Position numbers and translations under genes: made by a program | Part shown: piece by piece, positions 19,629-62,802 of the stretch | How the letters are laid out: each line of letters begins with the position of its first letter | Position numbering within the stretch: the stretch's first letter is position 1 | NCBI RefSeq assembly: GCF_006345805.1 | Contig: NC_042997.1 | Span: 202,616,001 to 202,680,000, forward strand | Direction: 5' to 3' | Origin: Octopus sinensis | Lineage: Eukaryota | Length of the DNA: 64,000 nt | Notes under the pieces: model-generated | What the model saw: only the letters and a program-made list of their open reading frames with translations | What the model was told of the DNA's origin: nothing | Databases searched by the model: none

Positions 19629-19999
19629 GTCAATGCAGAAGTAGGTAGTTTGATCTCAGAATGAGAAATGGTGTGATGCTGTAGTAAATTTGGTCCATCT
19701 AACCCATGCTGGTATGGAAAAGTAGATGTGAAAATAACGATATTGCTGTTGCTGATGATGAATCCTGTTCAATAGCTTCATAGCAAAATGACTTAAATCA
19801 ATGTTTGTTACAGGAGTGCAAGAAAAGAAAGTAGAAGGGTTAATTTTAACCCCATAATGCAAAACTACATTGTATGGGCCTTTTGGTGTTTAGCAACAAC
19901 AAATCATGCAATTGTATTGACATGGCATTGATGTTGTATGGAGTATACCCTTTAGGGTATACTCTTTAGGAATATACCCATTAGGGTACATATACATAC

Positions 20000-20001
<2 letters not shown>

Positions 20002-20041
<40 letters not shown>
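20002..20041. repeat. (TG)n microsatellite; (TA)n tracts also at ~854-878, 18498-18512, 52318-52418
   Basis: Directly visible. Confidence 0.95.
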
Positions 20042-28500: not shown

Positions 28501-30089
28501 AATTCACTCACATGTAGACAACATTTGTCCAAGGTACTGTGAAACCACTTGGAAAGAGAACTTCTTGGACAACATGGTCATGCCTATGGCTTATGGTTGT
28601 GTGACCACATTCTGAAATGATACTAAAAACTCCCTGCATGAAGCAGTCTTAGTTAATCTTTTTGGTGACAGTGATGTTTGTGAAAATGTTCACTAAGCAT
28701 TTCAGTGTTTTGGAATAAGAACTTAGTTACCATCCCATGTCCCTTCACAGTTATTGTTGAAGCTCCATAGCAACCCTAATTAAACAGACATTTCTTCAGA
28801 GGCTTTTCAGTTATGATCATTCTGACTTTTTTCTCAGACACATCACACCTGGGGTCACATTATTCAATGTATTCTTTAGCTACTGTTTTGAGCAAGTCAA
28901 AAATCTAGAACTGTCCCTCATTCTTCTTCACAATATTATACTCCCAATCCGGAGGATGTGGTGCTTCAGGAAAAATGTGCAAATGCTACTGGGCTTTATT
29001 TATCAAGGGCCCGTGTTGGTATATTATGTGAGGTCCAACAAAATTGAAGTTATGCAGTACCTCTAAACTTGCTGTAGCACACTACATAAGTAAAATATAG
29101 ATACAGAAAAGCTAATATGGTTCCTTAATTGATAGATTAGGGTTGATGATCAGAAAATTCAAGACCCACTTTTTTAATGAAATGCTTGGGATCAGAACTT
29201 GAGTATTTGGAATTAATACAGAACTGAAATCAGTAAACTGCATTTTAACATATACATTCCTCACTTTTAAATAGGTTGCTACCTAGTGAAAGGCATTTAA
29301 AAGTGTGTCCTTTAAGGACCTACTCACATCAGCAAACACCAAGCTTAGATATATTTTCAATACCTAACCAACCAAAGCATTTTACTTTAGTTTGAACATA
29401 TTCATGCCATCTCGGGAATGTAATTAGTCCCCATTTGAAATGTAATTTGTCTTTATCTCAGAAATATAGATAGTCCTCATCGCAGAAACATAGTTCTCAC
29501 CCTAGAATTATAGGTAGTCCACATTTCTCTAAAATAGTCCTTATCTCACTAATATAGTTAGTTCTCATTTCTGGAATATAGCGAATCTGTTTCAGAAGCT
29601 ATAGATGTAATCTTCATCTCAGAAATGTAGTTAGTCATCTTTTTAGATATTTTTCCCTTCTCATATGAATATCATTAGACTTCTCAGAAATATTGTTGTC
29701 CTCATTTTAGAAACATCTCAGTAATCTAGATAATATAGTTGTCTTTATTTCATAAGTGTATATTTAGTTCTCTCAGCCATATAAGTTTGTCCTTTTCTTA
29801 GAAATATAGTTAGTTCACATGTCAGATATACTGTTAGCCCTTCCCTCAGAAGTATAGTTTGTTTTTCTCTTAGAAATATAGTTATCTATTCTCTTAGAAA
29901 TATAGTTAGCCATTCTTTCGGAAACTTAGCTGTTCTCTGAAATATAGCTATTCTTTCTCTCAGAAGTATAATTCTCTTAGCAATACAGTTAGTCCTTTTG
30001 TGTGAAATATTGTCAGACCTTCTCTCAGAAATATAGTTATTCCTTCTCTTAGAAATAGAGTTATTCCTTTCTTTTAGAAATTGAGCTAG

Positions 30090-39000: not shown

Positions 39001-42000
39001 CTCTCAGAAATACACAGCTAGTCCCTCTCTCAGAAATACAGTCCTTCTCTCAGAAATACACTTAGTCCTTCTCTCAGAAATACACTTAGTCCTTCTCTCA
39101 GAAATACAGTTAGTCCTTCTCAGAAATACAGTTAGTCCTCTCTCAGAAATACAGTTAGTCCTTCTCTCAGAAATACAGTTAGTCCTTCTCTCAGAAATTC
39201 AGTTAGTCCTCTCTCAGAAATACAGTTAATCCTTCCCTCAGAAATACAGTTAGTCCTTCTCTCAGAAATGCAGTTAGTCCTTCTCTTAGAATTCAGTTAG
39301 TCCTCTCTCAGAAATACAGTTAGTCCTTCTCTCAGAAATACAGTTAGTCCTTCTCTCAGAAATACAGTTCGTCCTTCTCTCAGAAAATACAGATAGTCCT
39401 TCTCTCAGAAATACAGTTAGTCCTTCTCTCAGAAATACAATTAGTCCTTCTCTCAGAAATACAGTTGTGCTTCTCTCAGAAATACAGCTAGTCCTCTCTC
39501 AGAAATACAGTTTGTCCTTCTCTCAGAAATACAGCTAGTCCTCTCTCAGAAATACAGTTAGTCCTTCTCTCAGAAATACAGTTAGTCCTCTCATAAATAC
39601 AGCTAGTCCCTCTCTCAGAAATACAGTTAGTCCTTCTCTCAGAAATACACTTAGTCCTTCTCTCAGAAATACACTTAGTCCTTCTCTCAGAAATACTTAG
39701 TCCTTCTCTCAGAAATACAGTTAGTCCTTCTCTCAGAAATACACTTAGTCCTTTCTCTCGAAATACAGTTAGTCCTTCTCAGAAATACAGTCCTTCTTCA
39801 GAAATACAGTTAGTCCTTCTCTCAGAAATACAGTTAGTCCTTCTCTAGAAATACAGTTAGTCCCTTCTTAGAAATACAGTTTGTCCCTCTCTTAGAAATA
39901 CAGTTAGTCTTCTCTCAGAAATACAGTTAGTCCTTCTCTCAGAAATACAGTTAGTCCTTCTTTCAGAAATACAGTTTGTCCTTCTCTCAGAAATACAGTT
40001 CGTCCTTCTCTCAGAAATACAGTTAGTCCTTCTCTCAGAAATAGTTAGTCCTTGTCTCAGAAATACAGTTAGTCCCTCTCTTATAAATACAGTTAGTCCT
40101 TCTCTCAGAAATACAGTTAGTCCTTCTCTTAGAAATACACTTAGTCCTCTTAGAAATACAGTTAGTCCCTCTTTCAGAAATACTGTTAGTCCCTCTCTCA
40201 GAAATACAGTTAGTCCTTCTCTCAGAAATACAGTTAGTCCTTCTCTCAGAAATACAGTTCGTCCTACTTTCAGAAATACAGTTAGTCCTTCTCTTAGAAA
40301 TATAGTTAGTCCTTCTCTCAGAAATACAGTTAGTCCTTCTCTTAGAAATACAGTTAGTCCCTCTCTCATAAATACAGTTAGTCCTTCTCTCAGAAATACA
40401 GTTAGTCCTTCTCTCAGAAATACAGTTAGTCCTTCTTTCAGAAATACAGTTTGTCCTTCTCTCAGAAATACAGTTCGTCCTTCTCTCAGAAATACAGTTA
40501 GTCCTTCTCTCAGAAATAGTTAGTCCTTGTCTCAGAAATACAGTTAGTCCCTCTCTTATAAATACAGTTAGTCCTTCTCTCAGAAATACAGTTAGTCCTT
40601 CTCTCAGTAATACAGTTAGTCCTTCTTTCAGAAATACAGTTTGTCCTTCTCTCAGAAATACAGTTAGTCCTTCTCTTAGAAATACAGTTAGTCCCTCTTT
40701 CAGAAATACAGTTAATCCTTCTCTCAGAAATACAGTTAGTCCTTCCCTCAGAAATACAGTTAGTCCTTCTCTCAGAAATACAGTTAGTCCTTCTCTCAGA
40801 AATACAGTTAGTCCCTCTCTTAGAAATACAGATAGTCCCTCTCTTGGAAATACAGTTAGTCCAATCTCTCAGAAATAGAATTAGTCCTTCTCTCAGAAAT
40901 ACAGTTAGTCCTCTTAGAAATACAGTTAGTCCCTCTCTTAGAAATACAGTTAGTCCCTCTTTCAGAAATACAGTTAGTCCCTCTGTTAGAAATACAGTTA
41001 GTCCCTCTCTCAGAAATACAGTTAGTCCTTCTCTAGAAATACACTTAGTCCTTCTCTCAGAAATACAGTTAGTCCTTCTCTCAGAAATACACTTAGTCCT
41101 TCTCTCAGAAATACACTTAGTCCTTCTCTCAGAAATACACTTAGTCCCTCTCTCAGAAATACACTTAGTCCTTCTCTCAGAAATACACTTAGTCCTTCTC
41201 TCAGAAATACACTAGTCCTTCTCTCAGAAATACAGTTAGTCCTTCTCTCAGAAATACAGTTAGTCCGTCTCTCAGAAATACACTTAGTCCTTCTCTCAGA
41301 AATACAGTTCGTCCTTCTCTCAGAAATACACTTAGTCCTTCTCTCAGAAATACAGTTAGTCCCTCTCTTGGAAATACAGTTAGTCCCTCTCTCAGAAATA
41401 CAGTTAGTCCCTCCCTTAGGAATACAGTTAGTCTCTCTCTCTCTCAGAAATACAGTTAGACCTTCTTTCTGAAATATAGTTAGTCCTTTTCTCAGAAATA
41501 CACTTAGTCCTTCTCTCAGAAATACAGTTAATCCTTCCCTCAGAAATACAGTTAGTCCTTGTCTCAGAAGTACAGTTAATTCTTCTCTCAGAAATACAGT
41601 TAGTCCTTCTCTCAGAAATACAGTTCATCCTTCTCTCAGAATACAGTTAGTCCTTCTCTCAGAAATACAGTTAGTCCTTCTCTCAGAAATACAATTAGTC
41701 CTTCTCTCAGAAATACAGTTCGTCCTACTCTCAGAAATACAGCTAGTCCCCCTTCAGAAATACAGTTAGTCCTTCTCTCAGAAATACAGTTAGTCCTTCT
41801 CTCAGAAATACACCTAGTCCCTCTCTCAGAAATACAGTTAGTCCTTCTTTCAGAAATACAGTTAGTCCATCTCTCAGAAATACAGCTAGTCCCTCTCTCA
41901 GAAATACAGTCCTTCTCTCAGAAATACACTTAGTCCTTCTCTCAGAAATACACTTAGTCCTTCTCTCAGAAATACAGTTAGTCCTTCTCAGAAATACAGT

Positions 42001-43372
42001 TAGTCCTCCTCTCAGAAATACAGTTAGTCCTTCTCTCAGAAATACAGTTAGTCCTTCTCTCAGAAATTCAGTTAGTCCTTCTCTCAGAAATACAGTTAAT
42101 CCTTCCCTCAGAAATACAGTTAGTCCTTCTCTCAGAAATGCAGTTAGTCCTTCTCTTAGAAATTCAGTTAGTCCTTCTCTCAGAAATACAGTTAGTCCTT
42201 CTCTCAGAAATACAGTTAGTCCTTCTCTCAGAAATACAGTTCGTCCTTCTCTCAGAAATACAGATAGTCCTTCTCTCAGAAATACAGTTAGTCCTTCTCT
42301 CAGAAATACAATTAGTCCTTCTCTCAGAAATACATTTTGTGCTTCTCTCAGAAATACAGCTAGTCCCTCTCTCAGAAATACAGTTTGTCCTTCTCTCAGA
42401 AATACAGCTAGTCCCTCTCTCAGAAATACAGTTAGTCCTTCTCTCAGAAATACAGTTAGTCCTCTCATAAATACAGCTAGTCCCTCTCTCAGAAATACAG
42501 TTAGTCCTTCTCTCAGAAATACAGTTAGTCCTCTCAGAAATACACTTAGTCCTTCTCTCAGAAATATACTTAGTCCTTCTCTCAGAAATACAGTTAGTCC
42601 TTCTCTCAGAAATACACTTAGTCTTTCTCTCAGAAATACAGTTAGTCCTTCTCAGAAATACAGTCCTTCTTTCAGAAATACAGTTAGTCCTTCTCTCAGA
42701 AATACAGTTAGTCCTTCTCTTAGAAATACAGTTAGTCCCTTTCTTAGAAATACAGTTTGTCCCTCTCTTAGAAATACAGTTAGTCCTTCTCTCAGAAGTA
42801 CAGTTAGTCCTTCTCTCAGAAATACAGCTAGTCCCTCTCTCAGAAATATAGTTAGTCCTTCTCTCAGAAATACACTTAGTCCTTCTCTCAGAAATACAGT
42901 TAGTCCTTCTCTCAGAAATACACTTAGTCCTTCTCTCAGAAATACAGTTAGTCCTTCTCTCAGAAATACACTTAGTCCTTCTCTCAGAAATACACTTAGT
43001 CCTTCTCTCAGAAATACACTTAGTCCTTCTCTCAGAAATACAGTTAGTCCTTCTCTCAGAAATACACTTAGTCCTTCTCTCAGAAATACACTTAGTCCTT
43101 CTCTCAGAACTACAGTTCGTCCTTCTGTCAGAAATACAGTTCGTCCTTCTCTCAGAAATACACTTAGTCCTTCTCTCAGAAATACACTTAGTCCTTCTCT
43201 CAGAAATACAGTTAGTCCTTCTCTCAGAAATACAGTTAGTCCTTCTCTCAGAAATACAGTTAGTCCGTCTCTCAGAAATACACTTAGTCCTTCTCTCAGA
43301 AATACAGTTCGTCCTTCTCTCAGAAATACACTTAGTCCTTCTCTCAGAAATACAGTTAATCATTCTCTTAGA
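30090..43372. repeat. Intronic 24-bp satellite array, consensus AGAAATACAGTTAGTCCTTCTCTC, ~550 copies with higher-order duplications
   Basis: Directly visible tandem repeat; 8-aa periodic ORFs in the track; degenerate copies extend to ~29440 and ~44050. Confidence 0.98.
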
Positions 43373-43626
43373 AGTGTAGAATATCTATGGTCAGTGCACA
43401 CTTTTAGAAACATGGGTATAAGTTTTTATGAATAAGGAAATAAACTGGTAATATATGTTGGTAAATAGTGATAGTATGGTGGAAACTGATGGAAAAAGTG
43501 ACATTTAAAAATTTGTTTTGGGAAGAAGAGAACTGAGACATTTTGGAATTGACACTTTACCATCTGAAAAATATAGTTAGTTCTCATTTCAGAAACAGAT
43601 CGTCCCAATTTCATTTATGCCATTAC

Positions 43627-43963
43627 TTACTCTCTTTACTTGTTTCAGTCATTTGACTGCATCCATGCTGGGCCTGAGCACCACCTTTAGTCGAGCAAAT
43701 TGACCCCAGGACTTATTCTTTGTAAGCTTAGTACTTATTCTATTGGTCTCTTTTGCCGAACTGCTAAGTTACAGGGACGTAAACATACCAGCATCAGTTG
43801 TCAAGTGATGTTGGGGGGACAAACACACACACACACATACATATACATGGTGGGCTTCTTTCAGTTTCTATCTACCAAATCCAATCACAAGGCTTTGGTC
43901 GGCCTGAGGCTATAATAGAAGACACTTGCCCAAGGTGTCATGCAATGGTACTGAACCCGGAAC
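43627..43963 (-). mobile_element. SINE family B copy inserted in the degenerate satellite fringe
   Basis: Aligns by eye with 48323-48660; lacks the 5' head. Confidence 0.82.
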
Positions 43964-44343
43964 TTAGTTAATCTTTATTCCAAAAATATACATAGTTCAC
44001 ATATCAGATATATAATTAGTCTACACGTAAGAGATGTAGTTAGTCCTAATTTCATTTTGTTGGTTCTTTTGGAAATCTATTGAAAATATATTTGATTCAT
44101 GTTGATTCATTTGTAATTAGATCCTTTTGTGTGAGGGGGTATCGTCCTCTTTGTGTCTTTGTAGGATTTTGATTAGAAGGTCTCTTTAATCTCTGAGGTA
44201 GAGCTTCTTTTGCTCACACAGGTTTGTTTATTGTTGTTTTCATTGCAACAAATGCTTTTTTTATCTGGCAATGCTGCTAACTTTAGAGGCAGTTCCAACA
44301 TGGAGTAACAGGCCTGTGTTTGGCTATCTTTACTATCTCATGT

Positions 44344-44475
44344 CCATGGTCTAGTGATTAGACTGTTCAGTTCACAACTACAAGGTCATAGGTTCGATTT
44401 GTGGACCAAGCAGCACATTGTGTGCTTGAGCAAGGCACTTCATTTTATACTACTCCAATCTACTCAGCTAACAAT
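44344..44475 (+). mobile_element. Truncated tRNA-SINE of a third type
   Basis: TGGTCTAGTGATTAG A-box, GGTTCGATT B-box, then GTGTGCTTGAGCAAGGCACTT domain. Confidence 0.55.
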
Positions 44476-45162
44476 GCATAATCAGCCAAGTGCTGGTGCA
44501 GTCCTCTCTCTTCTATCTGTCATATCTTCAATTGTTCTGTCGGTTTATGGGTAGGAAGGCCAAGAGGATGTTTATGTTTGCTCATGGATATATTGTTGGT
44601 ACCTAAAAACAATCTGTATGAGTATGATTATACTATCAAGCTATACTTGCTGATAAGCAGGAAGAAGTGTGTGGAGAGAGCTCTTGCAACTATCAAAAGA
44701 CATAATTATGAATTTGATTCTTTCTCAAATATAGAATTTCATAATAAAAGGCAGGCAAAATATTGTTAATAGAGAGTTGACTTAAAAGATGGTAGTAAAT
44801 AATTTGAAAGGTGAAGTACAGATGGCATTTAAAGGATAATGGGGAAGAACAAAGGTTTGTTCATAGTTTGTGAATGGCTTTAAGTTCTCTATTAGAAGTT
44901 TTCCACAAAGTTGTGTTAGACTTTTCATTGGCGAAATCCATTCCTTATTATTTGTCAGAGACATCTTTGAGTATCTGTTGGGGAAGATATTATGAAGCAT
45001 TTTCAGTCTACTGGATACGGTGGTATTATTCTATTTTATTTTGGATCTAGTTAATGATATCAAAAGAACTGTTTTGTTGTTGGGATATCCTTGTTTGAGT
45101 TAGGTTCTACATAAACATTACCTATAGTTAATGTTGGTTTTGTACTTTTACTGTATTTTATC

Positions 45163-45500
45163 TTTTACTTGTTTCAATAATTGGACTGTGGCCATGCTGG
45201 AACACTGCCTTTAAAGGCTTTAGTCAAACAAATTGACTCAGTACTTATCTTATCAGTATTTCATTGCTAAACTGGTAAGTTACTGGGACATTATCCAACA
45301 CCAGTTATCAAGTGGTAGGAGTATCAAACACAAAGCCACACATACACATATACAACAGGCTTCCACACAATTTCCATCTACCAAATTCACTCGCAAAACA
45401 TTGTTTGGCCCAGGGCTATAGTAGAAGAAACTTGCCCAAGGTGTGTTGGACTGTTCCCAGAACAATGTTGTTGGGAAGCAAGCTTCTTAACCACACAGCC
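45163..45500 (-). mobile_element. SINE family B copy; further copies at ~46600-46945 (-), 3715-3875 (-), 56480-56620 (+), 63776-64000 (+), 22178-22260 (+)
   Basis: Shared TTTCCATCTACCAAATT.ACTC.CAA...GGCTATAGTAGAAGA.ACTTGCCCAAGGTG block. Confidence 0.75.
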
Positions 45501-45959
45501 AATGTCAAGGGCTTAAATTGGGTTTTGTTTCTTGCAAAAGAGACATGTCAATCCCGTTTTGGTCTGGATTGCAATCATCTGTTAATTCTTCTTTGTACTT
45601 CTTTTACCAAAACTACGTGGAATATGTAACAGTTCCACTATACTGTTATATTTCTGCAAAAATAGTTTATGTGAAAAATAAACAGATGAAGTAAAATGAA
45701 AAGCAATTCTAACTGCCATTCCCATTAGTTAGTCTGATGAAACTTGTTTCATGTTTTGTGTTGGTAAATTCACACAAGCTAGATATGGAGTTAAAAAAAG
45801 CCAGTTGTAAATTGAAAATCAGTGTGAAATCACTATTGCAGAATGAAATTGAACTTTTTCTCTGCACATTTATCTGAAGTAGTGTCACATGGGCTGTGTT
45901 TAAGCATCTCTCACCTGGCATGTGTATAGGAACTTTCCCTTAATGTCGACCTTTGTGCT

Positions 45960-46520
45960 GATCTTTTACACTTGTTATACAAGATTGTCCTTATTTTTTT
46001 TTTTATTTATCACAAGAAATGTGTCCTTGTCGTTTCTTGTGATCAGCAAAGAGTAAATCTCTAGTCGGCAATTTTGTTGTTTTTCAGTCAATTCAGGAGG
46101 CGCCCATTTGTTGAACTTCTTCACCTTGGCCGATTACATCACGATACCGGGAAGCAGTTGCAATGCTATGCCAAGCACTTCTGTAATTTCTCGTACCATT
46201 TTTCTTGGATCGGCTTCAAGTAAGGTTTTCAGATAATAAGGCTGTCATTACACCAGTCGAATGGACATTTACTACATTCTTTATATTCAAGGCCTACCTC
46301 TCCGGAAGGAAACATTCAAATCGGCATTTTACTGTGAGTCTATTAGCAGTGTTCTTGCTCTATGCTTGATGCAAGTTGCTTTGCTTACATTCAGAACTGG
46401 TTTGAATTTTTGTAGTAAAACTTGGCACAGTTTTGCTTCAAATAAACACTTCAGAATTTTCAGTTTTGCATCACAAACTAAAGCACATATTACAAAACAA
46501 ATGATTTAAGTTGGGTTCAA
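45960..46520 (-). pseudogene. Decayed mariner transposase N-terminal fragment (second family)
   Basis: Frameshifted remnants FPSGEVGLEYKECSKCP, TLLEADPRKMVREITEVLG and KFNKWAPPELTEKQQNCRLE correspond to the mariner FRSG..LED..RSGRP, EADP and KWVPHEL motifs. Confidence 0.7.
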
Positions 46521-47301
46521 CAACTGTTTTTGAAAACATAAATAGCATTTTTTTTAAAAACTGTCAAAATAAAATTTCCCCATATTGTTTTATTCTTCCA
46601 CGTGTTTCAGTCATTGGACTGGAGCAATGTCTTGAAAGGTTTTAGTTGAACAAATCAACTGCAGTTCTATTTTTAAGTTCAGTATTCTATCAGTCTCTTT
46701 TGCCAAATCACTAAAATTACAGGGACATAAACCACTAACATCATTTGTTAAAAGGGGCAGGGGATAAGACAAACATGCACACATGACAGGCTTCAACACA
46801 GTTTCTGTACACCAAATTTATTCACAAGACAATTAATTAGCCTGGAGCTATAGTAGAAGACACTTGCCTAAGGTGCTACATAGTGGGACTGAACCTGAAA
46901 TTATATGGTTGCAAACCAAACTTCTTAATCACACATCCATGCCTGCACCTATATAAATCAATTATATTATCTACATATTAACTGGGAATAATAGATTTTT
47001 CCACTTATTCTTATTGTAGAGTAATTTAGCTCCACAAACTATGCCCAGACTGACTTAGATATTAAATTTCTAGTAAGTACAAGATTCCAGATTCTTAGTG
47101 TAATTCTTTCAATGTTACAGTTTTCTAAGTATTTCATTTGGCAATAAAGTATCTTGGCTTATTCCTGCCTTTTATTATATAACTATTGTGTCATCATGTT
47201 CGTCTATCGCATCGTATTTAAATATTTCTAAGATTCATCAAGCTGTCTGTCTTTTCTCTGTACTAAGGGAAGTGTTTATTAGTCACTTATATGTAGAATA
47301 A

Positions 47302-47530
47302 GGCAGCGAGCTGGCAGAATCGTTAGCATACCGGGCGAAATGCTTAGCGGTATTTCGTCTGTCGTTACGTTCTGAGTTCAAATTCCGCCGAGGTCGACTT
47401 TGCCTTTCATCCTTTCGGGGTCGATAAATTAAGTACCAGTTACGCACTGGGGTCGATATGATCGACTTAATCCGTTTGTCTGTCCTTGTTTGTCCCCTCT
47501 GTGTTTAGCCCCTTGTGGGTAGTAAATAAA
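47302..47530 (+). mobile_element. tRNA-derived SINE family A, young copy with 11-bp TSD
   Basis: A-box TGGCAGAATCGTTAG, B-box GAGTTCAAATTCC, central GTCGACTTTGCCTTTCATCCTTTCGGGGTCGATAAA (MetaSINE-like from memory); TSD TATATGTAGAA at 47288-98 and 47539-49. Confidence 0.88.
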
Positions 47531-47740
47531 TATAAATATATATGTAGAACCTAGGTGTCTTCCCTAATAAGGTTTACTGAAGAAAGTTAGAGAGTTAAAC
47601 ACTCTACTCAGTGATATGTCAGTCACATTTATAGTTCTTACTACATAATGTGTTTGTTTTTTGATACTGTGGATTCAGTAATTTTAGTTTCCCTGTTCAT
47701 ATAAGATTCTTTCCAAGATAGTTCTGCAAATCATTATTAT

Positions 47741-48175
47741 GACAAGCTGGCAGGATCGTTAGTGTGTCAAACAAAATGTGAAGTAATATTTCTTGTGGCT
47801 CTTTGTGTTCTGTGTTCTAATCCAGTCTAGGTCAACTTTACCTTTCATCCTTTCATGGTCGATAAAATAAAGTACCTGTGAGGGACTGGGGTTGAAGCAA
47901 TCGACTTGACCCCTCTCACTAAAATTTCTGGTCTTATGCGAAAATTAGAAAGAGTTATTTTTATTATTAAGGAAGTTAGCACGCAAGACAAAAAATGCTT
48001 AGCAGCATTCTGCCTGTCTTTGTTTTGAGTTCAAATTCCACCAAGGCTGACTTCGCCTTTCATCTTCTCAAAGTCAATAAAATGAGTACCAGCTGAGCGC
48101 TGGAGTCAATGTAACCAACCCCCTCCCTCGAAATCGCTGGCCTAGTGTCTGAATTTGAAACCATTATTATTATTA
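47741..48175 (+). mobile_element. Two older degenerate SINE A-like copies in tandem
   Basis: Both retain CCTTTCATC and AGTACC central motifs and B-box remnants. Confidence 0.65.
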
Positions 48176-48322
48176 TTCAATAAATACGATAAAATCCAGA
48201 TGAAGCAGTGATAGTCAATCTATTTACTTCAATAGAACATAATATCAATAAATTATCTAACTAGTTTTAGCCATGGATATCAAAGTCATTTCAAATTTTA
48301 TCTCAGATGTTCTGAGTTCATT

Positions 48323-49790: not shown

Positions 49791-50249
49791 ATATATGATG
49801 AAAGTGATTGAGACCTTAGCAATAGCAAATAGTATTTTATTGTTAAATTCTGAAGTTTGCATTCCAACAAGGTAATAATTGTCATTGATAATACAGACTT
49901 ATACATGTCTGTGTGTGTGTTTGTTTATGCATATGCATTCATGTATACACCCACATATACATATCTATGGTATTTGTGCCTAAATTTCACAAACACATTT
50001 GTTTTTAGCTATTGATAAAATAGAAAAGATTATATTAATGACAAGTAAACAATTTTATTTTATACAAGATATTCAAATACAGATTTGATAGTGATAGATC
50101 TCCAGCCAGTAAAAATAGTTCAGATTAATCTTTTAGTGAACTAGGAGTCCTGCAGCTAATAATGTTGCTGTATATCTATGCTTTAATAGTCCTGTAATTA
50201 ACAAATTTTTTGAGCCTGTTTTTATCATGTAATTTTCTGTAATTTTCAG

Positions 50250-50301
50250 TGGTTCCCGTTGTCCATGTGGGGAATACTGCAACAACAAAAGATTCACTCG
50301 A
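50250..50301 (+). CDS. SETD2: SETD2 exon, AWS domain part 2 (CGSRCPCGEYCNNKRFTR)
   Basis: aattttcAG acceptor and CGA|GTAAGT donor; 52 nt; completes the Cys codon split by the intron; matches human SSRCPNGDYCSNRRFQR. Confidence 0.93.
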
Positions 50302-52369
50302 GTAAGTTAATGAGTTCAATTTTTGTATTCATTCTCACACATACATGCACACTGAATATTAGATTGTTTTTACAATCATCAGTTAATGATACAAATATCT
50401 CTGTGGTGTTCATGCAAATGTCATGTAAAAACATCCATTACACTCTCGGAGTGGTTGATGTTAGGAAGGGCATCCAGCCATAGAAAACCATGGCAAATCA
50501 GACTGGAGTCTGGTGCATCTCTTCGTCTTGTCAGCCCTGGTCAAACCGTCCAACCCATGCCAGCATGGACAATGGACATTAAATGATGAATTTTATACAA
50601 AAATGTTATTGCGTGTCTGGTAAAGCAACAAAGGTAATTATAATCATGATGATGATTATGGCAGCTGTGTTGCAACACCCCAGTATCTGTTATGGCAGTA
50701 GTTAATGATGCAGAGGCTGATGTCACCTTTTACTACTACGAATGTGGCCACCACAAACACAATTATTACTACTATAACTACTAACATGACGACAACCTCT
50801 GACATACTCATTGCTAATTTGATACCCTTGACATGATGCAATATTAAGGCTATGTTGGGTGTGGTGGTAATAATGATGCTGACTATGACAAATGTGTTTA
50901 CCATCTAACTCATACTCCTCCTTGGCAAGGCATTTTAAACATTTTTATCAATTGATGGAAGTTTTTCATTAAAAAATTTTCTTCTACTACACAACAGACA
51001 ATGTGATTGACTAGTTTAACTTTGTGAAGCTAGCTTGGCTAGTAAACTTTGTTTAGAATTTTACTTTACTCTGGAGATATGCTTTGACTGAGAAGACCCA
51101 GCAAACAAAGTGAGATCATAGCTAGCCTATGCCAGTGTCGCATAACCAGCTCACTCAAAAGTACCTTTGGATTGTAGGGCGACATGCCATGCTTGAGGAG
51201 ACCTATTAAGTCAAGTACATCATTAACATCAAAATCAAATCAAACCACAATCAAATGGAAATTGTAGTTGTGGCTGATGCCAGCGCCGCCCGTCTGGCTC
51301 CCTGTGCCGGTGGCACGTAAAAAGCACCATCCAAACGTGGTTGATGCCAGCCTCCTCACCCTGACCGTCTCCTGTGCTGGTGGCACATAAAAAGCCCCAT
51401 CCGAATGTGGCTGATGCCAGTGCTGCCTTGACTGGCTTCTGTGCCGGTAGCATGTAAAAGCACTATCCAAACGTGGTCAATGTAAGCCCCATCTGGCCCC
51501 TGTGCTGGTGGCACGTAGAAAGCACCTACTATACTCTCAGAGTGGTTGGCGTTAGGAAGGGCATCCAGCTGTTGAAACACTGCCAGATCAGATTGGAGCC
51601 TGGTGCAGCCAGTCAAACCATCCAACCCATGTCAGTATGGAAAAAGTGCTTTCCTGTATAGTCTCCGAGCAGCAGTTTTGGATGTGAGATTTGGTAGAAA
51701 GAGGCTGTGTTGAAATCTATAGGAGGATCCATTCCTGTTTTTAGGTGGTAGATTTAATCTGGCCCATGAGTACTTTTCACAGAGGTTACTGTGTTGCTAG
51801 TGTCTGGATAAGGTCACTGATATGAAGATAACTTCCTCTCTTCTGTCAATCTTGGAGACTCTAGAAAAGGTTATAGATGCTGCTGTTTATCATTTGGCTG
51901 AGTCGTAAGAAAAATATGGGCTAGATTAATGCACACTATGCTCTACTTACTTCAAATAACTCAAGATGCTTTCTTTAGTCATTAAAAGTTGTTGATCTTA
52001 AAGGAAATATCTTTTGATTGTATTTGTCCTTGTTTATGATTGTTGACATTTTAGGAAATGTAAGGGGTGTGTATGTATAGATCATCATTATCATCATTTA
52101 ATGTCTGCTTTCCATGCTGGCATGGGTTGTACAGTTTGACATGGAACTGGCTAGCAAAGCTGTCCTGACTCTCAGCACCTGAAAAGACAAGCCTGTATGT
52201 GTGGAAGATGGTGATTTTGCTTAGCTTGACACGTCTTATCAAGTACAGCAAATAACCACATCCCCTGGTCCCTTGTCATTTCCTCAGTGAGGCCCAGTGT
52301 CTGAAGATCCTTTCTCATATATATATATATATTATATATATATATATGTACATGTGCCTCTCTCTCTCT

Positions 52370-52411
<42 letters not shown>

Positions 52412-52418
52412 TATATAT

Positions 52419-53200
52419 AAATTGTATGATAGATTGCAGTCAATTCATTCTCTCTTACCTGTTTGTGTCTGCCTTCCAAATGCTGTTTTTACTGAGATCT
52501 CCCTTTTTAGTAGAAGAAATAGCTATAACCCTTTGACTGCTATTTCTAAATTCGGTATGTGGTAAGGCAACTCGTTGCTAAACCCTTATTGCTTAGTATT
52601 ACTTAAATTTTCCTCGAATGAGGCTTTTACATGCCGAAGACTACTTGGTGTAATTGATAATTTTTCCAAATTAATTAATTTCACCCTTCATTATTACGGA
52701 TAACCATATTTTATCTCAGTAGATGACCACAGCATCTTGTTTTGGCTACACGCGGGTGGGAAGGGGCTGTTGACACAATCGTTTCATTCACAAATTGAAT
52801 TCGGTGATACCAGTTGCGGATTCTAGCTCGCTCTGATACTGAGTTGAGTTGGTGCCTTCTGGTATCTCAAAATTCAATATATAATCATTTATGATTATAG
52901 TATTCTACGCTGAAGAGAAAAGAAGTTTCGGTAAGATAGAATTATTTAATATTTAATATTTAATTCTTATGCTTTCCTAAAAACTTGATTTCGAAACGTA
53001 CGTCCGTGGATAACTAAAAAAATTGTATGATAGATTGCAGTCAATTCATTCTCTCTTACCTGTTTGTGTCTGCCTTCCAAATGCTGTTTTTACTGAGATC
53101 TCCCTTTTTAGTAGAAGAAATAGCTATAACCCTTTGACTGCTATTTCTAAATTCGGTATGTGGTAAGGCAACTCGTTGCTAAACCCTTATTGCTTAGTAT
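52419..53200 (+). mobile_element. Retrozyme-like / Penelope-dependent non-autonomous retroelement: 601-bp monomer in a 1.3x tandem, inserted in a (TA)n tract
   Basis: 52419-52599 and 53020-53200 are identical 181-bp direct repeats. The hammerhead lies just before the second repeat. No ORF; (TA)n on both flanks. Confidence 0.7.
52897..53016 (+). ncRNA. Type I hammerhead ribozyme, predicted cleavage after GUC at 53004
   Basis: Core CTGAAGA (52910-16). Stem II 52917-52992 closed by G-C. GAAA at 52993-96. Short palindromic stem III ACGTACGT. GTC triplet 53002-04. Stem I TCTACG/CGTGGA plus 4 more bp after a 2x2 mismatch. Pairing checked by hand. Confidence 0.85.
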
Positions 53201-53650
53201 ATATATATATATATGTATGTGTATAATGATGCAAGACTTTGAACCTCATGAAGGAGCAATAAACACCAGGATGGGATAACTGGCAAATGTTATGCTTTGG
53301 AAGACCTGCCCATCTCATGGCATGGGTTAAGCAGTTTGACAAGATCTTATGAATTTAAAGTCTGCATTGGGCTTCAATGTCTGTATTGATATGTACAATG
53401 TCTGTACAACTGTGTGCCCTTCCTTACATCGATAACGTCAGAGTGATATGTGTTTTTGTTTGTGGCACTAGCTCTAGTGAAGATTGCCTTACATCTTACT
53501 AGACTAAGGGCCCAAGATGGCTCCTAAGTGACTCCTGCTATGAAAATATAACATTTGAAACAAATGTATAAATTCTAGTAACGCTTTTTGATTACAGCTG
53601 ACACTCAGGAATTAAATGTAATAATAATAATAATATTTTGTACTTTTTAG

Positions 53651-53727
53651 CATCAATATGTAAATGTCACAACATTCCAGACAGAAAACAAAGGACTTGG
53701 ATTGATGACTCTTGAAGATGTCCTACC
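53651..53727 (+). CDS. SETD2: SETD2 exon, start of SET domain (HQYVNVTTFQTENKGLGLMTLEDVLP)
   Basis: tactttttAG acceptor and CC|GTAAGT donor; 77 nt, phase 0-2; TExKGxGL SAM-binding motif. Confidence 0.93.
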
Positions 53728-54378
53728 GTAAGTAATCTTACTTAGAAACTATTGTTTTTAACCATCATCCTCATTGTTTTAAGTCTACTTTTCCATGCTT
53801 CTTTGGGTTGGATGGTCATTATTGCACTTGCAGATAGATTGGAGGAGCAATCTCACAGTTTTCATTTTTGGCTTGATTTTTGTGGTTGGATGCTCTTCCT
53901 ATGACCAACATCTCTATACAGTGCACTGAATGCATTATGGCACCAGTAACAGAAGAAATTAGGGATAAGAGCATGACAGATAGCATGCAATGGATAAATG
54001 GTACAGATAAATAAATGTTGATACTAAATTGCAAGGTAGGGAATATAGCTAGAGTCCTTACCTGGGGTGGTCCCCTTAACTCTTTTGATACCAACATTCT
54101 TGAGACTACTCCTGATTCTATGATACAAACCTCCTGTTTTAAAATATTTAAAACTTCCCATCAGACTTTCATGTTCATTTATGTTCCCAACTCTAGCTTA
54201 ATAATACTGAGTGTTTCCTCATTTTTCAATGTGGTTAAAGCACATGTTTCAAGGTGAGTGAGAGGTCAAGGACGATGAAAAGCTATGTGAACAAATGAAA
54301 CTATTGCCATTCTTACTCACACAGGCAGCATAATACAGTGAGATTGAGAAAAGAAGAAAGTGATTGAGTAGACTTAAT

Positions 54379-54610
54379 GGCGATGAGCTGGCAGAATCGT
54401 TAGCATGCCGGGTGAAATGCTTAGCGGTATTTCGTCTGCCGTTACGTTCAGAGTTCAAATTCCGCCGAGGTCGACTTTGCCTTTCATCCTTTCGGGGTTG
54501 ATAAATTAAGTACCAGTTACGCACTGGGGTCGATATTATCGACTTAATCCGTCTGTCTCTCATTGTTTGTCTCCTCTGTGTTTAGCCCCTTGTGGGTAGT
54601 AAAGAAATAG
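54379..54610 (+). mobile_element. SINE family A copy
   Basis: Near-identical to 47302-47530. Confidence 0.88.
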
Positions 54611-54859
54611 TTATGCAGATATACATGCATGCATGCATGTGTGTGTGTGTATCTACTGGTATTTCCCTTCAAACCACTTCTCCATTCTTGTTCTTCACCC
54701 TCTCTATTCACCTCTACTCTTATCTCTAACTATCTGCTACTCTTTCCTCTCACTTTTATAAACCACCTACTCCTGATCCACTGTCCTTAACTTCCTCACA
54801 GATACCCCCATTCACTCTGATATAAATGTCAGGTAGCTATGTATCTTATCTGTAGCAAG

Positions 54860-55090
54860 TTGGCGAAATAGCAGAAACGTTAGCACACCAGGCGAAATGC
54901 TTAGTAGTATTTCATCTGACTTTATGTTCTGAGCTCAAATTCTGCCGAGTTTGACTTTGCCTTTCATCCTTTCAGGGTCAATAAATTAAGTACCATTTAC
55001 GCACTGGGGTCGATATAATCGATTTAATCCCTTTGTCTGTCCTTGTTTGTCCCCTCTATGTTTAGCCCCTTGTGGGCATTGAAGAAATAA
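54860..55090 (+). mobile_element. SINE family A copy (more diverged)
   Basis: Same A/B boxes, central domain and 3' GTTTAGCCCCTTGTGGG. Confidence 0.85.
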
Positions 55091-55499
55091 GATGCTTGTC
55101 CCTGACATAAAAATATCACCTCTCCCTCATCTCAAGTACCATCATCGCCACCACTTAGTTGAAGGCTTTTCCCTTTCTGCCTTTATTTGTCTTCCCCTTT
55201 TTTTGTCCTTTCCTCTCTTGCAAGATACTTGGCAACCCTAGTAGTACTGGTGGCATGAAAAAAAAAAAAACAGCTCCCAGGACACATTATAAAATGGTTG
55301 GCATTAGAAGGGCATCCAGCTTTAGAAACCATGCCAAAGCTGACATGGTACACAATGCAACTCTGTTTCACTGGATCATGTCAAACTGTCCAAAATGGAC
55401 ATTAAATGATGATGATGATTACATACACACACATGCACACCTAACGATACATACTTTAGTATACATTTAATAAATGTAATTTTGAAGATTTTTAAAAAA

Positions 55500-55921
55500 A
55501 AGAATTGGGTGTGATTGTTGCCAGAGCAAGCTGGCCTCCGTGCCAATGGCACATAAAAAACACCATTCGAGCGTGATCATTACCTGCGTTGCCTTACTGG
55601 CTCTTGTGCTGGTGGCACGTGAAAAAACATTCGAGTGAGGTCATTGCCAGTACCGCTGGACTGGCTCCTGTGCAGGTGGCACATAAAAAGCACCATTTGA
55701 GCATGGCCATTGCCAGTACCGCCTGACTGGCCCTTGTGCCGGTGGCACGTAAAACACCTACAACACTCTCGGAGTGGTTGGCATTAGGAACGGCATCCAG
55801 CTGTAGAAACTCTGCCAGATCAGATTGGAGTCTGGTGCAGCCATATGGTTTGCCAGACCTCGGTTAAATCGCCCAACCCATGCTAGCATGGAAAGCGAAT
55901 GTTAAATGATGATGATGATGC
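55500..55921 (+). mobile_element. Repeat family C long copy with ~60-bp internal subrepeats; other + copies at 23065-23165, 50436-50590, 51130-51645, 55250-55420
   Basis: Repeated GTGC(C/T)GGTGGCAC(G/A)TAAAA units, then GGAGTGGTTGGCATTAGGAA...GTTAAATGATGATGATGATG tail ending ~70 nt before the SET exon acceptor. Confidence 0.78.
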
Positions 55922-55990: not shown

Positions 55991-56192
55991 GCATACATTT
56001 GTCATGGAGTATGTTGGAGAAGTTCTTGACTATAAGCAGTTCAAGAATCGGACAAAGCAGTATGCTAAAAATGGCCAGGAGCATTATTATTTCATGTCCC
56101 TGAATGCTGATGAAGTGATTGATGCCACATACAGAGGAAATAAATCTCGTTTTATTAATCATAGCTGTGATCCAAATTGTGAAACTCAAAAG
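55991..56192 (+). CDS. SETD2: SETD2 exon, SET core (HTFVMEYVGEV...DATYRGNKSRFINHSCDPNCETQK)
   Basis: ttcttttgtAG acceptor and AAG|GTGAGT donor; 202 nt; EYxGEV and RFINHSCDPN motifs; ORF 55899..56204. Confidence 0.97.
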
Positions 56193-56774: not shown

Positions 56775-56866
56775 TGGACGGTAAATGGAATGCTGCGAAT
56801 TGGATTTTTCACCAAAACGTTTATTAGTGCTGGGCAGGAGATGACATTTGATTATCAGTTTGAAAG
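56775..56866 (+). CDS. SETD2: SETD2 exon, SET C-terminus (WTVNGMLRIGFFTKTFISAGQEMTFDYQFE+AG)
   Basis: ttttttctttAG acceptor and AAG|GTAAAT donor (read-through hits TAA); 92 nt; ExTFDY motif. Confidence 0.95.
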
Positions 56867-57184
56867 GTAAATCTGATATCTAGGTATATTATTTCATTCC
56901 TTTGTTACACTACTAAACAAGAGAGTTAACCTGACATATGATGGAGCTAAAGCTTTGATATTAAGCTAGTACTTTTATCTATTAAAGTCAAGTGTGTGTT
57001 TCAGTTTTATTATTTAATCAAATATATTACAGTATTATTAAGTAACAAGATCGTTTGACATAAGATCTGGCTACTGATGCCCTACTCCATTGTATTTAAT
57101 ATTCTTTATTAAATTTTTTTTTAAATATTTTTTTTTGAAGTTCATGAATAATAGAACAAGTAGAAAGATATATTTTTCAACACA

Positions 57185-57300
57185 TAAATACTGAACAGTA
57201 TATATAAAGGATAAAATCTTTTTAAGAGCAGAAAAATTTGCCAGCAAATTTTTCTGCTCTTAAAAAGATTTTATCCTTTATATATACTGTTCAGTATTTA
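57185..57300. repeat. Perfect 56-bp-stem hairpin with 4-nt loop (CCAG), extending imperfectly to ~57143-57342
   Basis: 57185-57240 is the exact reverse complement of 57245-57300. Confidence 0.95.
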
Positions 57301-57461
57301 CTTGTTGAAAAAAATCTTTCAACTTTCTTTGTTGTAATCATGGTTCTCATAAATGACCACATCTTGATAGTTTAACATCGACTTAGATCTTTTCTTTTTA
57401 AATTCCAAATATATGAATAGTTAGAAAAGTCTTTCAGTGGCATTTTATATTATTTGTGCAG

Positions 57462-62378: not shown

Positions 62379-62595
62379 ATTTCTTTACTACCCACAAGGG
62401 GACAAACAAGGACAGACAAATGGATTAAATCGATTACATCGACCCCAGTGCGTAACTGGTACTTATTTAATCGACCCCGAAAGGATGAAAGGCAAAGTCG
62501 ACCTCGGCGGAATTTGAACTCAGAACGTAACGGCAGACGAAATACGGCTACGCATTTCGCCCGGCGTGCTAACGTTTCTGCCAGCTTGCCACCTT
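62379..62595 (-). mobile_element. SINE family A copy, antisense
   Basis: Reverse complement of 47302-47530 with a small internal deletion. Confidence 0.88.
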
Positions 62596-62802
62596 GCACG
62601 CAGAGCCATGTGGCTGTAAAGCAAGCCTCTTGGCCACACAGCCTTGCCTTATGTCAGTTGTTGCTGCTACAAAATAATTATGAAGTAAAATTGATTCTAT
62701 CATGATATCATATTTTCTGAATTTTTATCTATAAATAATCTGTCTTTCATTTTGATCTGTTTCTGTTTCATTCAACTTTTTTCCCTCCTTTCTCATTCTT
62801 AG

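What the first reader, a model, noticed from the sequence alone, without database searches (positions are those of the whole stretch)
52897..53016. Sense-strand self-cleaving ribozyme in the intron between the AWS and SET exons, with long stem II and palindromic mini stem III
Seen: all core nucleotides are present (CUGAAGA, G10.1-C11.1, GAAA, GUC). Stem II is 76 nt; stem III is ACGUACGU, which gives only 2 bp plus a GUAC loop as a monomer. Established: such short palindromic stem III hammerheads typically cleave efficiently as dimers. Inference: being on the pre-mRNA strand, it could cut SETD2 intron RNA co-transcriptionally; weak monomer activity may explain why the insertion is tolerated, or it may act as a concentration-dependent switch.
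Basis: partly seen in the sequence, partly recalled or inferred. Interest (0 to 1): 0.75.

Follow-up and report, generated by a model that had tools for sequence, protein, structure and literature searches.

The report
Hammerhead ribozyme on young octopus retroelement
The motif is a convincing type I hammerhead ribozyme, but it belongs to a small, recently inserted, non-coding mobile element (retrozyme / Penelope-type) sitting in an intron of the octopus SETD2 gene, and nothing suggests it is a regulatory device of that gene.

Summary
Window 52897-53016 (+) holds a complete type I hammerhead: CUGAAGA, G10.1-C11.1, GAAA, A15.1-U16.1, GUC|C. Helix I is 6 bp, a 2x2 loop, then 4 bp. Helix II is 4 bp, a 2x2 loop, then a long extension (76 nt). 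Helix III is 2 bp plus a GUAC loop. A motif this good arose in 1 of 400 random 64-kb sequences. Rfam Hammerhead_1 scores it 17.8 bits, below the gathering score of 34, with a 72-nt insertion in helix II.

The context explains it. The window is Octopus sinensis SETD2 (+ strand). The ribozyme lies in a 782-bp block (52419-53200), which is 1.3 head-to-tail copies of a 601-bp non-coding unit. The block sits inside a (TA)n microsatellite and is absent from the orthologous site in O. vulgaris and O. bimaculoides.

The unit RNA is exceptionally self-paired on the ribozyme strand (z = -6.5). The insertion's 5' end lies 15 nt from the predicted cut site. This anatomy matches animal non-LTR retrozymes, which are non-autonomous derivatives of Penelope-like elements.

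The SETD2 "switch" idea is unsupported. I found no other family copies with the tools available. This is a new member of a known kind, of moderate-low interest.

The parts
52419..53200 (+). Whole insertion: 782 bp, or 1.30 head-to-tail copies of a 601-bp non-coding unit (A-B-A). It is absent from the orthologous site of O. vulgaris and O. bimaculoides.
   Evidence: Self-BLAST; empty sites in L002 and L004.
52419..52599 (+). Segment A, copy 1 (181 bp): the partial upstream unit, equivalent to a pseudo-LTR.
   Evidence: 100% identical to 53020-53200.
52600..53019 (+). Segment B (420 bp, single copy), which carries the hammerhead at its 3' end.
   Evidence: No ORF longer than 47 aa. No protein homologue for any of the six frames.
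53020..53200 (+). Segment A, copy 2 (181 bp).
52897..53016 (+). Type I hammerhead ribozyme motif, complete.
52898..52909 (+). Helix I, 5' strand: 4 bp outer part, AU internal loop, 6 bp next to the core.
52910..52916 (+). Core C3-A9 (CUGAAGA).
52917..52992 (+). Helix II, 76 nt: 4 bp (G10.1-C11.1 then three A-U), a 2x2 internal loop (AG/GA), then an extended imperfect hairpin.
52993..53003 (+). G12-A13-A14 plus helix III (A15.1-U16.1, C-G, loop GUAC). ACGUACGU is palindromic.
53004..53005 (+). Predicted self-cleavage site, GUC(17)|C(1.1).
   Evidence: Sequence; Rfam alignment.
53005..53016 (+). Helix I, 3' strand.
52317..52418 (.). Left part of the (TA)n microsatellite into which the element inserted.
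   Evidence: TRF; sequence.
53201..53215 (.). Right part of the same (TA)n tract. The tract is uninterrupted in O. vulgaris.
50239..50301 (+). SETD2 exon encoding the end of the AWS domain (upstream exon of the host intron).
   Evidence: tblastn of P0007.
53651..53728 (+). SETD2 exon encoding the start of the SET domain (downstream exon, 647 nt after the cut site).
   Evidence: Conserved in Argonauta.

Best explanation
The hammerhead is the self-processing ribozyme of a small non-coding, non-autonomous retroelement of the animal 'non-LTR retrozyme' kind, that is, a Penelope-like-element (PLE) dependent element. The unit is 601 nt, 35% G+C, and folds into a highly self-paired RNA on the ribozyme strand.

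Inferred life cycle. Multimeric or tandem transcripts of a donor locus are cut at GUC|C by the hammerhead, either as a monomer or as a double hammerhead through the palindromic helix III. The monomers may be circularised by a host ligase. A reverse transcriptase supplied in trans, most likely from one of the recently active octopus Penelope families, copies the RNA by target-primed reverse transcription into a nick in a (TA)n tract.

The copy in this window arose that way in the O. sinensis lineage, after its split from O. vulgaris. cDNA synthesis started at ...UUAGUAU, ran 1.3 times round the unit, and ended 15 nt from the ribozyme cut site. The result is the A-B-A block.

Its position in a SETD2 intron, in sense orientation, is incidental. 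With a single ribozyme and the next exon only 647 nt downstream, any cleavage of SETD2 pre-mRNA is a side effect, probably minor, and not a selected function.

Shown: the motif, the insertion, its tandem anatomy, the empty sites and the RNA structure signal. Inferred: catalytic activity, circular RNA, PLE mobilisation and the effect on SETD2.
For: 1. The hammerhead core and three helices are complete. The architecture is the canonical metazoan type I one: helix I 6 bp, helix II 4 bp before the first loop, helix III 2 bp plus a palindromic tetraloop (architecture as described in PMC4209133, and PMC7229834).
2. A motif this good arose by chance in 0.25% of random 64-kb sequences. It is the only descriptor hit among the window and the loci L002-L004 (L001 contains the same copy).
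3. It sits in a 782-bp block made of 1.3 head-to-tail copies of a 601-bp unit, with two 181-bp segments that are 100% identical.
4. The whole block is missing from the orthologous (TA)n tract of O. bimaculoides and O. vulgaris. It is therefore a young insertion.
5. Partial tandems (pseudo-LTRs), a (TA)n target bias, hammerheads and non-autonomous derivatives are described hallmarks of PLEs (PMC8557442). Animal retrozymes are low-GC tandem repeats with type I hammerheads (PMC7229834). Their consensus lengths run 51-972 bp and they derive from PLE pLTRs (preprint 10.64898/2026.07.22.740005).
6. The unit has no coding capacity.
7. Folded as a circle, the unit gives -158.6 kcal/mol against -118.7 +/- 6.1 for dinucleotide shuffles (z = -6.5), with 20 G-U pairs. 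The opposite strand gives z = -2.8 with 8 G-U pairs. Five neighbouring intron segments give z from -1.6 to +0.55. The hammerhead helices I and II are part of that global fold.
8. The insertion's 5' end corresponds to position +16 after the predicted cut site. That is expected if the template RNA's 5' end was made by the ribozyme.
9. O. vulgaris has 30 recently active Penelope families with 329 insertions (PMC13282606), so a mobilising enzyme is plausibly present.
Against: - No second copy of the unit was found: none in the window, none in 332 kb of cephalopod SETD2 loci, and none in metagenome or viral collections. Family status, conservation of the core and covariation in the helices are therefore all untested.
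- The locus has only one hammerhead, and it lies outside the duplicated 181 bp. In PLEs hammerheads are typically inside the pLTR.
- The Rfam score is below the gathering threshold.
- The 601-nt unit is longer than the 170-400 nt typical of invertebrate retrozymes.
- The canonical loop 1/loop 2 nucleotides are replaced by internal loops, so activity is uncertain.
- The proximity of the 5' end to the cut site is a post hoc observation, with roughly 3-5% probability by chance.
- The insertion is seen in a single assembly, the one the window comes from.
Confidence: 0.7

Rival explanations
1. The block is not a separate non-autonomous family. It is a heavily 5'-truncated partial-tandem insertion of an autonomous Penelope-like element: only its 3' UTR/pLTR region was copied, and the hammerhead is the PLE's own.
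For: [quoted passage not shown] Their hammerheads lie near the 3' ends or in the pLTRs, and (TA)n targets are common (PMC8557442). Penelope families are recently active in O. vulgaris.
Against: PLE hammerheads in metazoans are mostly 'minimal' variants, with a longer helix II, a short helix I and little or no helix III (PMC4209133). This motif has the canonical retrozyme-type architecture. The 601-bp period closes on itself head to tail with no trace of RT/EN coding sequence. The strong strand-specific rod-like fold fits a self-contained small RNA.
Confidence: 0.15
2. The hammerhead-like motif is a chance match inside an unrelated insertion and has no catalytic activity.
For: Rfam scores it 17.8 bits against a gathering score of 34. 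The fold z-score of the 120-nt motif alone is only -1.41. At 0.0025 expected per 64 kb, on the order of 100 such matches would occur by chance in a genome of a few Gb. No homologues are available to show conservation.
Against: The motif lies in exactly the kind of element known to carry hammerheads: a young tandem non-coding retro-insertion in (TA)n. Features not used in the search also fit: the G10.1-C11.1 pair, the GUC triplet, internal loops at the canonical 6-bp and 4-bp distances, the palindromic loop III, the helix I extension, a global fold that keeps helices I and II, and the insertion end near the cut site. Twelve metagenome sequences matched the core plus the 3' half by chance, and none of them had helices I or II.
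Confidence: 0.07
3. The intronic sense-strand ribozyme is, or acts as, a regulator of SETD2. It cleaves the pre-mRNA co-transcriptionally, so that insertion carriers have lower SETD2 output, possibly in a concentration-dependent way through dimers.
For: It is in sense orientation in the intron that splits the AWS and SET coding exons. There are precedents: the CPEB3 intronic ribozyme tunes its host mRNA (PMC10919898), and type I hammerheads related to retroelement ones are conserved in amniote introns such as RECK (PMC6155905). Invertebrate hammerheads with 2-bp helix III can be fast as monomers.
Against: The insertion is absent from the two closest sequenced species, so no selection for it can be shown. 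There is only one ribozyme copy, so no cis dimer can form. The downstream exon starts only 647 nt after the cut site. In Xenopus about 43% of retrozyme copies overlap introns (after size normalisation they are under-represented there), so intronic copies are common and mostly tolerated. The insert has no polyA signal and no strong splice consensus. An incidental, partial effect on SETD2 pre-mRNA remains possible. A selected switch is not supported.
Confidence: 0.04
4. The block is a DNA-level element (foldback/MITE of the Tc1-mariner type, or a Helitron derivative) that targets TA, and the self-complementarity reflects DNA hairpins.
For: It inserted in a TA tract and has strong self-complementarity.
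Against: It has no terminal inverted repeats; both ends fall in direct repeats. It has no 5'-TC / CTRR-3' Helitron ends. The pairing is strongly strand-asymmetric, with 20 G-U pairs on the + strand against 8 on the - strand, and -158.6 against -127.2 kcal/mol. That points to RNA-level rather than DNA-level structure. A 1.3-mer head-to-tail arrangement is a retro-insertion signature.
Confidence: 0.03

Closest known systems
Animal non-LTR retrozymes (Cervera & de la Pena 2020, PMC7229834; Li, Clavereau & Pollet 2026 preprint 10.64898/2026.07.22.740005)
   Same: Type I hammerhead with helix I of 6 bp, helix II of 4 bp and helix III of 2 bp plus a palindromic tetraloop. Low-GC (35%) non-coding unit in head-to-tail arrangement. 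Highly self-paired RNA. No LTR, PBS or PPT features. Coexists with active PLEs in the host lineage.
   Different: The unit is 601 nt, against the usual 170-400 nt in invertebrates (though within the 51-972 bp reported in 2026). Only 1.3 copies and a single ribozyme at this locus. Loop 2 is replaced by a roughly 60-nt extension of helix II, and loop 1 by a 2x2 internal loop. Family copy number and circRNA expression are unknown. I found no cephalopod example in the literature searched.
Penelope-like elements and their pLTR hammerheads (Cervera & de la Pena 2014, PMC4209133; Craig et al. 2021, PMC8557442)
   Same: Partial-tandem insertion that forms a direct terminal repeat (pseudo-LTR). Insertion into a (TA)n microsatellite. 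Type I hammerhead with a palindromic helix III able to form dimers.
   Different: No RT/GIY-YIG ORF or remnant. The ribozyme is of the canonical type, not the 'minimal' PLE type. The ribozyme lies outside the duplicated 181 bp.
Newt/axolotl satellite 2 and Schistosoma Sm-alpha hammerhead repeats
   Same: Genomic repeat-borne type I hammerheads. A short palindromic helix III permits a double hammerhead (PMC7229834).
   Different: Those are very high-copy arrays or SINE-like elements of about 330 bp with conserved loop 1/loop 2 contacts. Here a single 1.3-mer is seen, with no tRNA-like part.
Conserved intronic ribozymes of amniotes (RECK/CTCL hammerheads; CPEB3 HDV-like ribozyme)
   Same: Sense-strand self-cleaving motif inside an intron of a protein-coding gene. 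The amniote hammerheads resemble retroelement hammerheads (PMC6155905).
   Different: Those are conserved at orthologous sites across classes of vertebrates. This one is absent even from the sister species, so it is at most raw material for such domestication.

Membership tests
Hammerhead ribozyme, type I (Rfam RF00163, clan CL00010) | Conserved catalytic core: C3-U4-G5-A6-N7-G8-A9, G12-A13-A14, A15.1-U16.1, H17. | tested here: met
   CUGAAGA 52910-16; GAA 52993-95; A52996-U53003; C53004.
Hammerhead ribozyme, type I (Rfam RF00163, clan CL00010) | Three helices around the core, with helix I open (type I topology). | tested here: met
   Helix I is 6+4 bp, helix II is 4 bp plus an extension, helix III is 2 bp plus GUAC.
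Hammerhead ribozyme, type I (Rfam RF00163, clan CL00010) | Score at or above the curated gathering threshold of the covariance model. | tested here: not met
   17.8 bits against 34, E = 0.2 in a 501-nt search. The full model aligns with a 72-nt insertion in helix II. No hit in the whole-window gathering scan.
Hammerhead ribozyme, type I (Rfam RF00163, clan CL00010) | Tertiary contact between helix I and helix II loops, needed for fast cleavage at physiological Mg2+. | tested here: inconclusive
   Internal 2x2 loops lie at the canonical distances, 6 bp into helix I and 4 bp into helix II. However, the conserved loop nucleotides are not recognisable and no 3D test was possible.
Hammerhead ribozyme, type I (Rfam RF00163, clan CL00010) | Site-specific self-cleavage. 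| not testable with these tools
   Needs in vitro transcription. The only indirect hint is that the insertion's 5' end lies 15 nt from the predicted cut.
Hammerhead ribozyme, type I (Rfam RF00163, clan CL00010) | Conservation of the core and covariation in the helices among homologues. | tested here: inconclusive
   No homologue was retrievable.
Animal non-LTR retrozyme | Head-to-tail tandem repeats, each carrying a type I hammerhead. | tested here: inconclusive
   The head-to-tail arrangement is present, but only 1.30 units with one hammerhead.
Animal non-LTR retrozyme | Non-coding, low-GC unit of a few hundred nt. | tested here: met
   601 nt and 34.8% GC. Longest ORF is 47 aa. No protein match in any frame.
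Animal non-LTR retrozyme | Highly self-paired RNA of the ribozyme polarity. | tested here: met
   z = -6.5 on the + strand, -2.8 on the - strand, and -1.6 to +0.55 in controls.
Animal non-LTR retrozyme | [quoted passage not shown] | not testable with these tools
   No eukaryotic genome or transcriptome DNA search was available. There are 0 further copies in 332 kb of cephalopod loci.
Penelope-like element (autonomous) | ORF with a telomerase-like RT and a GIY-YIG endonuclease. | tested here: not met
   The six-frame translation of the unit finds no protein at E <= 10. ORFs are 47 aa or shorter.
Penelope-like element (insertion signature) | Partial tandem forming a pseudo-LTR; microsatellite, especially (TA)n, target. 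| tested here: met
   A-B-A with an identical 181-bp repeat. Inserted in (TA)n, with empty sites in two species. Features as described in PMC8557442.
Domesticated intronic ribozyme (RECK/CTCL hammerheads, CPEB3 type) | Conservation at the orthologous intron position across species. | tested here: not met
   Absent in O. vulgaris and O. bimaculoides.

The most novel reading that the evidence does not exclude
The element is a currently mobile 601-nt hammerhead retrozyme of Octopus sinensis, and this particular copy is a natural 'ribozyme knock-in'. Its sense-strand hammerhead cleaves a fraction of SETD2 pre-mRNAs between the AWS and SET coding exons. If the insertion is polymorphic, it would then be a hypomorphic allele of a major H3K36 methyltransferase. 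It would also be an observable first step towards the kind of intronic-ribozyme domestication seen in amniote RECK.
Probability: 0.07. Interest if true: 0.7.

Novelty: new member of a known kind. Interest (0 to 1): 0.35.

Why it matters
If other genomic copies confirm it, this would be a cephalopod example of the hammerhead-bearing retrozyme / PLE-dependent class. My literature search found no paper describing hammerhead elements in octopus. The insertion is young enough (species-specific, with identical repeats) to study mobilisation directly.

Its anatomy bears on how these elements transpose. It is a 1.3-mer, its 5' end lies 15 nt from the ribozyme cut site, and priming occurred in a (TA)n tract. 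That is the pattern expected from reverse transcription of a multimeric or circular ribozyme-processed RNA.

The long helix II extension, with internal loops at the canonical positions, is a small natural experiment on hammerhead tertiary contacts.

For SETD2 biology it is probably irrelevant. For genome annotation it is a reminder that Rfam gathering thresholds miss hammerheads with large helix insertions.

Tried and rejected
1. The Rfam gathering scan of the whole window found no hits. The hammerhead shows only in an E-value scan of 501 nt. Weak snR33 and mir-317 matches there are noise.
2. I first read the 181-bp perfect repeats as a long target-site duplication around a 420-bp insert. I rejected this because neither repeat copy exists at the empty site in O. 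bimaculoides or O. vulgaris.
3. An exact look-up of the element's 47-aa ORF in public assemblies found nothing on record.
4. A composite six-frame 'protein' query of the unit against 5.8 billion proteins, meant to pull out Logan contigs with other copies, gave nothing at E <= 10.
5. A family-specific DNA pattern gave 0 hits in JGI metagenome contigs and IMG/VR.
6. The same 3' half with a short helix II gave 12 metagenome hits, but none has helices I or II. They are chance matches and serve only as a negative control.
7. nhmmer of the unit against the four cephalopod SETD2 loci found only itself.
8. The descriptor scan found no other hammerhead in L002-L004, and Rfam gathering found none in L002 or L004.
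9. A tRNA-derived SINE (Sm-alpha-like) was rejected: ARAGORN finds no tRNA-like part.
10. MITE, foldback and Helitron readings were rejected: no TIRs, no Helitron ends, and strand-asymmetric pairing.
11. I looked for PLE RT fragments among long ORFs of the loci, to use as a query for the autonomous partner. None was found, so I did not spend the last large protein search.
Full report
**The observation.**
At window 52897-53016 (+) the sequence reads: 5'-AUAGUAUUCUACG CUGAAGA [76-nt helix II] GAAA CGUACG UC|C GUGGAUAACUA.
- Every invariant hammerhead position is present: C3-A9 at 52910-52916, G10.1 (52917) paired with C11.1 (52992), G12-A14 at 52993-52995, A15.1 (52996) paired with U16.1 (53003), and C17 at 53004.
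- Helix I is 6 bp next to the core, a 2x2 internal loop, and 4 more bp.
- Helix II is 4 bp, a 2x2 internal loop, then an imperfect extended hairpin.
- Helix III is 2 bp closed by GUAC.
- The unconstrained MFE fold of the 120 nt gives helices I and II. Adding helix III costs 1.1 kcal/mol.
- Two copies co-fold into a double hammerhead with an 8-bp ACGUACGU/ACGUACGU helix III (-56.2 against 2 x -21.9 kcal/mol).

**Is it more than chance?**
- Rfam's Hammerhead_1 model aligns end to end but scores 17.8 bits (gathering 34; E = 0.2 for a 501-nt search), with a 72-nt insertion in helix II. The whole-window gathering scan is therefore empty.
- I wrote a descriptor: CUGANGA, at least 4 contiguous bp in helix II, a helix II region of up to 110 nt, GAAA, at least 2 bp in helix III, UH, and at least 5 bp in helix I.
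- It finds only this site on both strands of the window, even when relaxed, and nothing in the three other cephalopod loci.
- Among 400 first-order Markov random 64-kb sequences, a motif at least as good occurred once (0.25%). The relaxed version occurred in 11%.
- So it is significant for one window, but on its own it would not be decisive in a genome of a few Gb. The context decides.

**Where we are.**
- The large exon at 5063-11650 is 100% identical to Octopus vulgaris SETD2-like protein.
- Window 51500-54500 is 100% identical to the O. sinensis assembly GCA_006345805.1 (L001), so the window comes from that assembly.
- tblastn of the O. sinensis protein maps the exons. The end of the AWS domain is at 50239-50301 and the start of the SET domain at 53651-53728, with further SET exons at 55992-56192 and 56775-56864.

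**The carrier.**
- Self-BLAST shows that 52419-52599 and 53020-53200 are 100% identical (181 bp). They flank a unique 420 bp whose 3' end is the hammerhead.
- This is not a target-site duplication. I fetched the orthologous SETD2 loci of O. bimaculoides (L002) and O. vulgaris (L004). In both, the flanks align up to a (CT)n(TA)n tract and resume directly after it. The whole 782-bp A-B-A block is missing and the (TA)n tract is uninterrupted.
- The block is therefore a young insertion of 1.30 head-to-tail copies of a 601-bp unit into a TA microsatellite. It is specific to the O. sinensis sequence.
- Local flanks are about 95-98% identical between the two sister species, while the two 181-bp copies have no difference.
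- The unit has no ORF above 47 aa. No frame matches any of 5.8 billion proteins. It has no tRNA-like part and is 34.8% G+C.

**RNA-level structure.**
- I folded the 601-nt unit as a circle, opened at the predicted cut site. The + strand gives -158.6 kcal/mol against -118.7 +/- 6.1 for 100 dinucleotide shuffles (z = -6.5). The fold has 20 G-U pairs and keeps hammerhead helices I and II.
- The complementary strand gives -127.2 kcal/mol (z = -2.8, 8 G-U pairs). Five neighbouring 601-nt intron segments give z between -1.6 and +0.55.
- The element is thus an unusually self-paired RNA of the same polarity as the ribozyme. This argues against a DNA-level foldback element.

**Comparison with what is described.**
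- Cervera and de la Pena describe the canonical metazoan type I hammerhead as helix I of 6 bp, helix II of 4 bp, and helix III of 1-2 bp capped by a 2-4-nt palindromic loop, able to act as a dimer in tandem repeats (PMC4209133).
- They showed that such hammerheads reside in low-GC, non-coding tandem repeats, the non-LTR retrozymes. These are expressed as highly self-paired linear and circular RNAs and are probably mobilised by PLEs (PMC7229834).
- Craig et al. describe PLE insertions as partial tandems that create pseudo-LTRs. They report frequent (TA)n targets, hammerheads near the ends, and non-autonomous derivatives that also make head-to-tail insertions (PMC8557442).
- A 2026 preprint finds retrozyme consensus lengths of 51-972 bp, homology to PLE pLTRs, and about 43% of Xenopus copies overlapping introns.
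- A 2026 repeat annotation of O. vulgaris lists 30 recently active Penelope families (PMC13282606).
- The block matches this picture feature by feature. The differences are the 601-nt unit length, the single ribozyme at this locus, and the replacement of loops 1 and 2 by internal loops, with helix II continuing for about 60 nt.

**Mechanism.**
- The inserted sequence equals unit positions 16-601 followed by 1-196, counted from the predicted cut site.
- The 3' end (...UUAGUAU) abuts (TA)n with TA microhomology, as expected for target-primed reverse transcription from a nick in the TA tract.
- The cDNA then ran through one complete unit, including an uncleaved or religated ribozyme site. It ended 15 nt from a ribozyme cut site.
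- That is what a template with a ribozyme-generated 5' end would give. Such a template could be a multimer cut once, or a circle that opened during copying.
- This is inference. The coincidence has a 3-5% chance probability and was noticed after the fact.

**Consequences for SETD2.**
- Only one hammerhead is present, so no intramolecular double hammerhead can form on the pre-mRNA.
- Whether the monomer is active is open. A 2-bp helix III with a tetraloop is the usual invertebrate form, and those tested are efficient as monomers when the loop-loop contact is intact.
- The next exon begins 647 nt after the cut site. In the CPEB3 ribozyme case the distance is 9931 nt, and the ribozyme half-life there matches polymerase transit time (PMC10919898).
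- The insert carries no polyA signal and no strong splice consensus.
- Absence from the sister species rules out the conservation that marks the domesticated amniote intronic hammerheads (PMC6155905).
- Some incidental cleavage is possible. A selected switch is unsupported.

**Limits.**
- I could not search any cephalopod genome or transcriptome at the DNA level.
- All attempts to recover further copies failed. The 12 metagenome matches to the core plus the 3' half are chance hits without helices.
- Family status, core conservation, covariation, circRNA expression and catalysis therefore remain untested.
- The insertion is documented in one assembly only.

**Verdict.**
This is a genuine-looking type I hammerhead carried by a young retrozyme / PLE-type non-autonomous retroelement. 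It is a new member of a known kind, and its location in SETD2 is most likely incidental.

Noticed in passing
window 30287-43373 (array edges about 29770-43373): A giant intronic minisatellite in SETD2: 24-bp unit GTTAGTCCTTCTCTCAGAAATACA, about 550 copies, 90% matches, open in several frames. The homologous array in O. vulgaris (L004, about 42549-48311) is much shorter, so it changes length quickly.
   Followed up: partly
window 11913-12695 (-): Remnant of a mariner-type DNA transposon just downstream of the large SETD2 exon. Three adjacent stop-separated ORF pieces; the middle one matches Pfam Transposase_1 (E = 2.4e-26).
   Followed up: partly
window 52790-52883 (+), inside the inserted unit: A near-perfect hairpin (uugaauucggugauaccag ... 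cugguaucucaaaauucaa) with a weak, sub-threshold mir-317-like Rfam hit (13.3 bits against 56). It is part of the unit's rod-like fold. Whether it is processed into small RNA is unknown.
   Followed up: partly
window 47300-47498, 54386-54575, 54855-55055 (+), and 62397-62597 (inverted): Four copies (88-92% identical) of a SINE-like repeat of about 200 bp, scattered through SETD2 introns in both orientations. More copies occur in L001, L002 and L004.
   Followed up: no
window 51296-51526 and 55547-55754; related inverted copies at 18591-18840 and 1629-1768: A repeat family with internal tandem sub-repeats of about 66-70 bp (GGCAC(G/A)TAAAAA(G/A)CACC...), abundant in all three Octopus loci.
   Followed up: no
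window 19029-19628 and 57170-57315: Two near-perfect palindromes. One is nested inverted repeats of 64-114-nt arms at 94-99% identity. The other has 72-nt arms at 96% identity, separated by 2 nt. They may be foldback elements or MITEs.
   Followed up: no
window 18513-20026 against L004 31663-32790; window 22260-23490 against L004 35002-36256: Breaks in the otherwise 98-99% identical O. sinensis / O. vulgaris alignment. These are further species-specific indels or TE insertions in the same gene.
   Followed up: no
L003 (Argonauta hians SETD2 locus), e.g. 22391-22855, 37465-38121, 55468-55902, 69137-69700: Several copies of a LINE-type ORF tail (...RLRWFGHVERM-like) in both orientations within the Argonauta SETD2 introns. 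No hammerhead motif was found in that locus.
   Followed up: no
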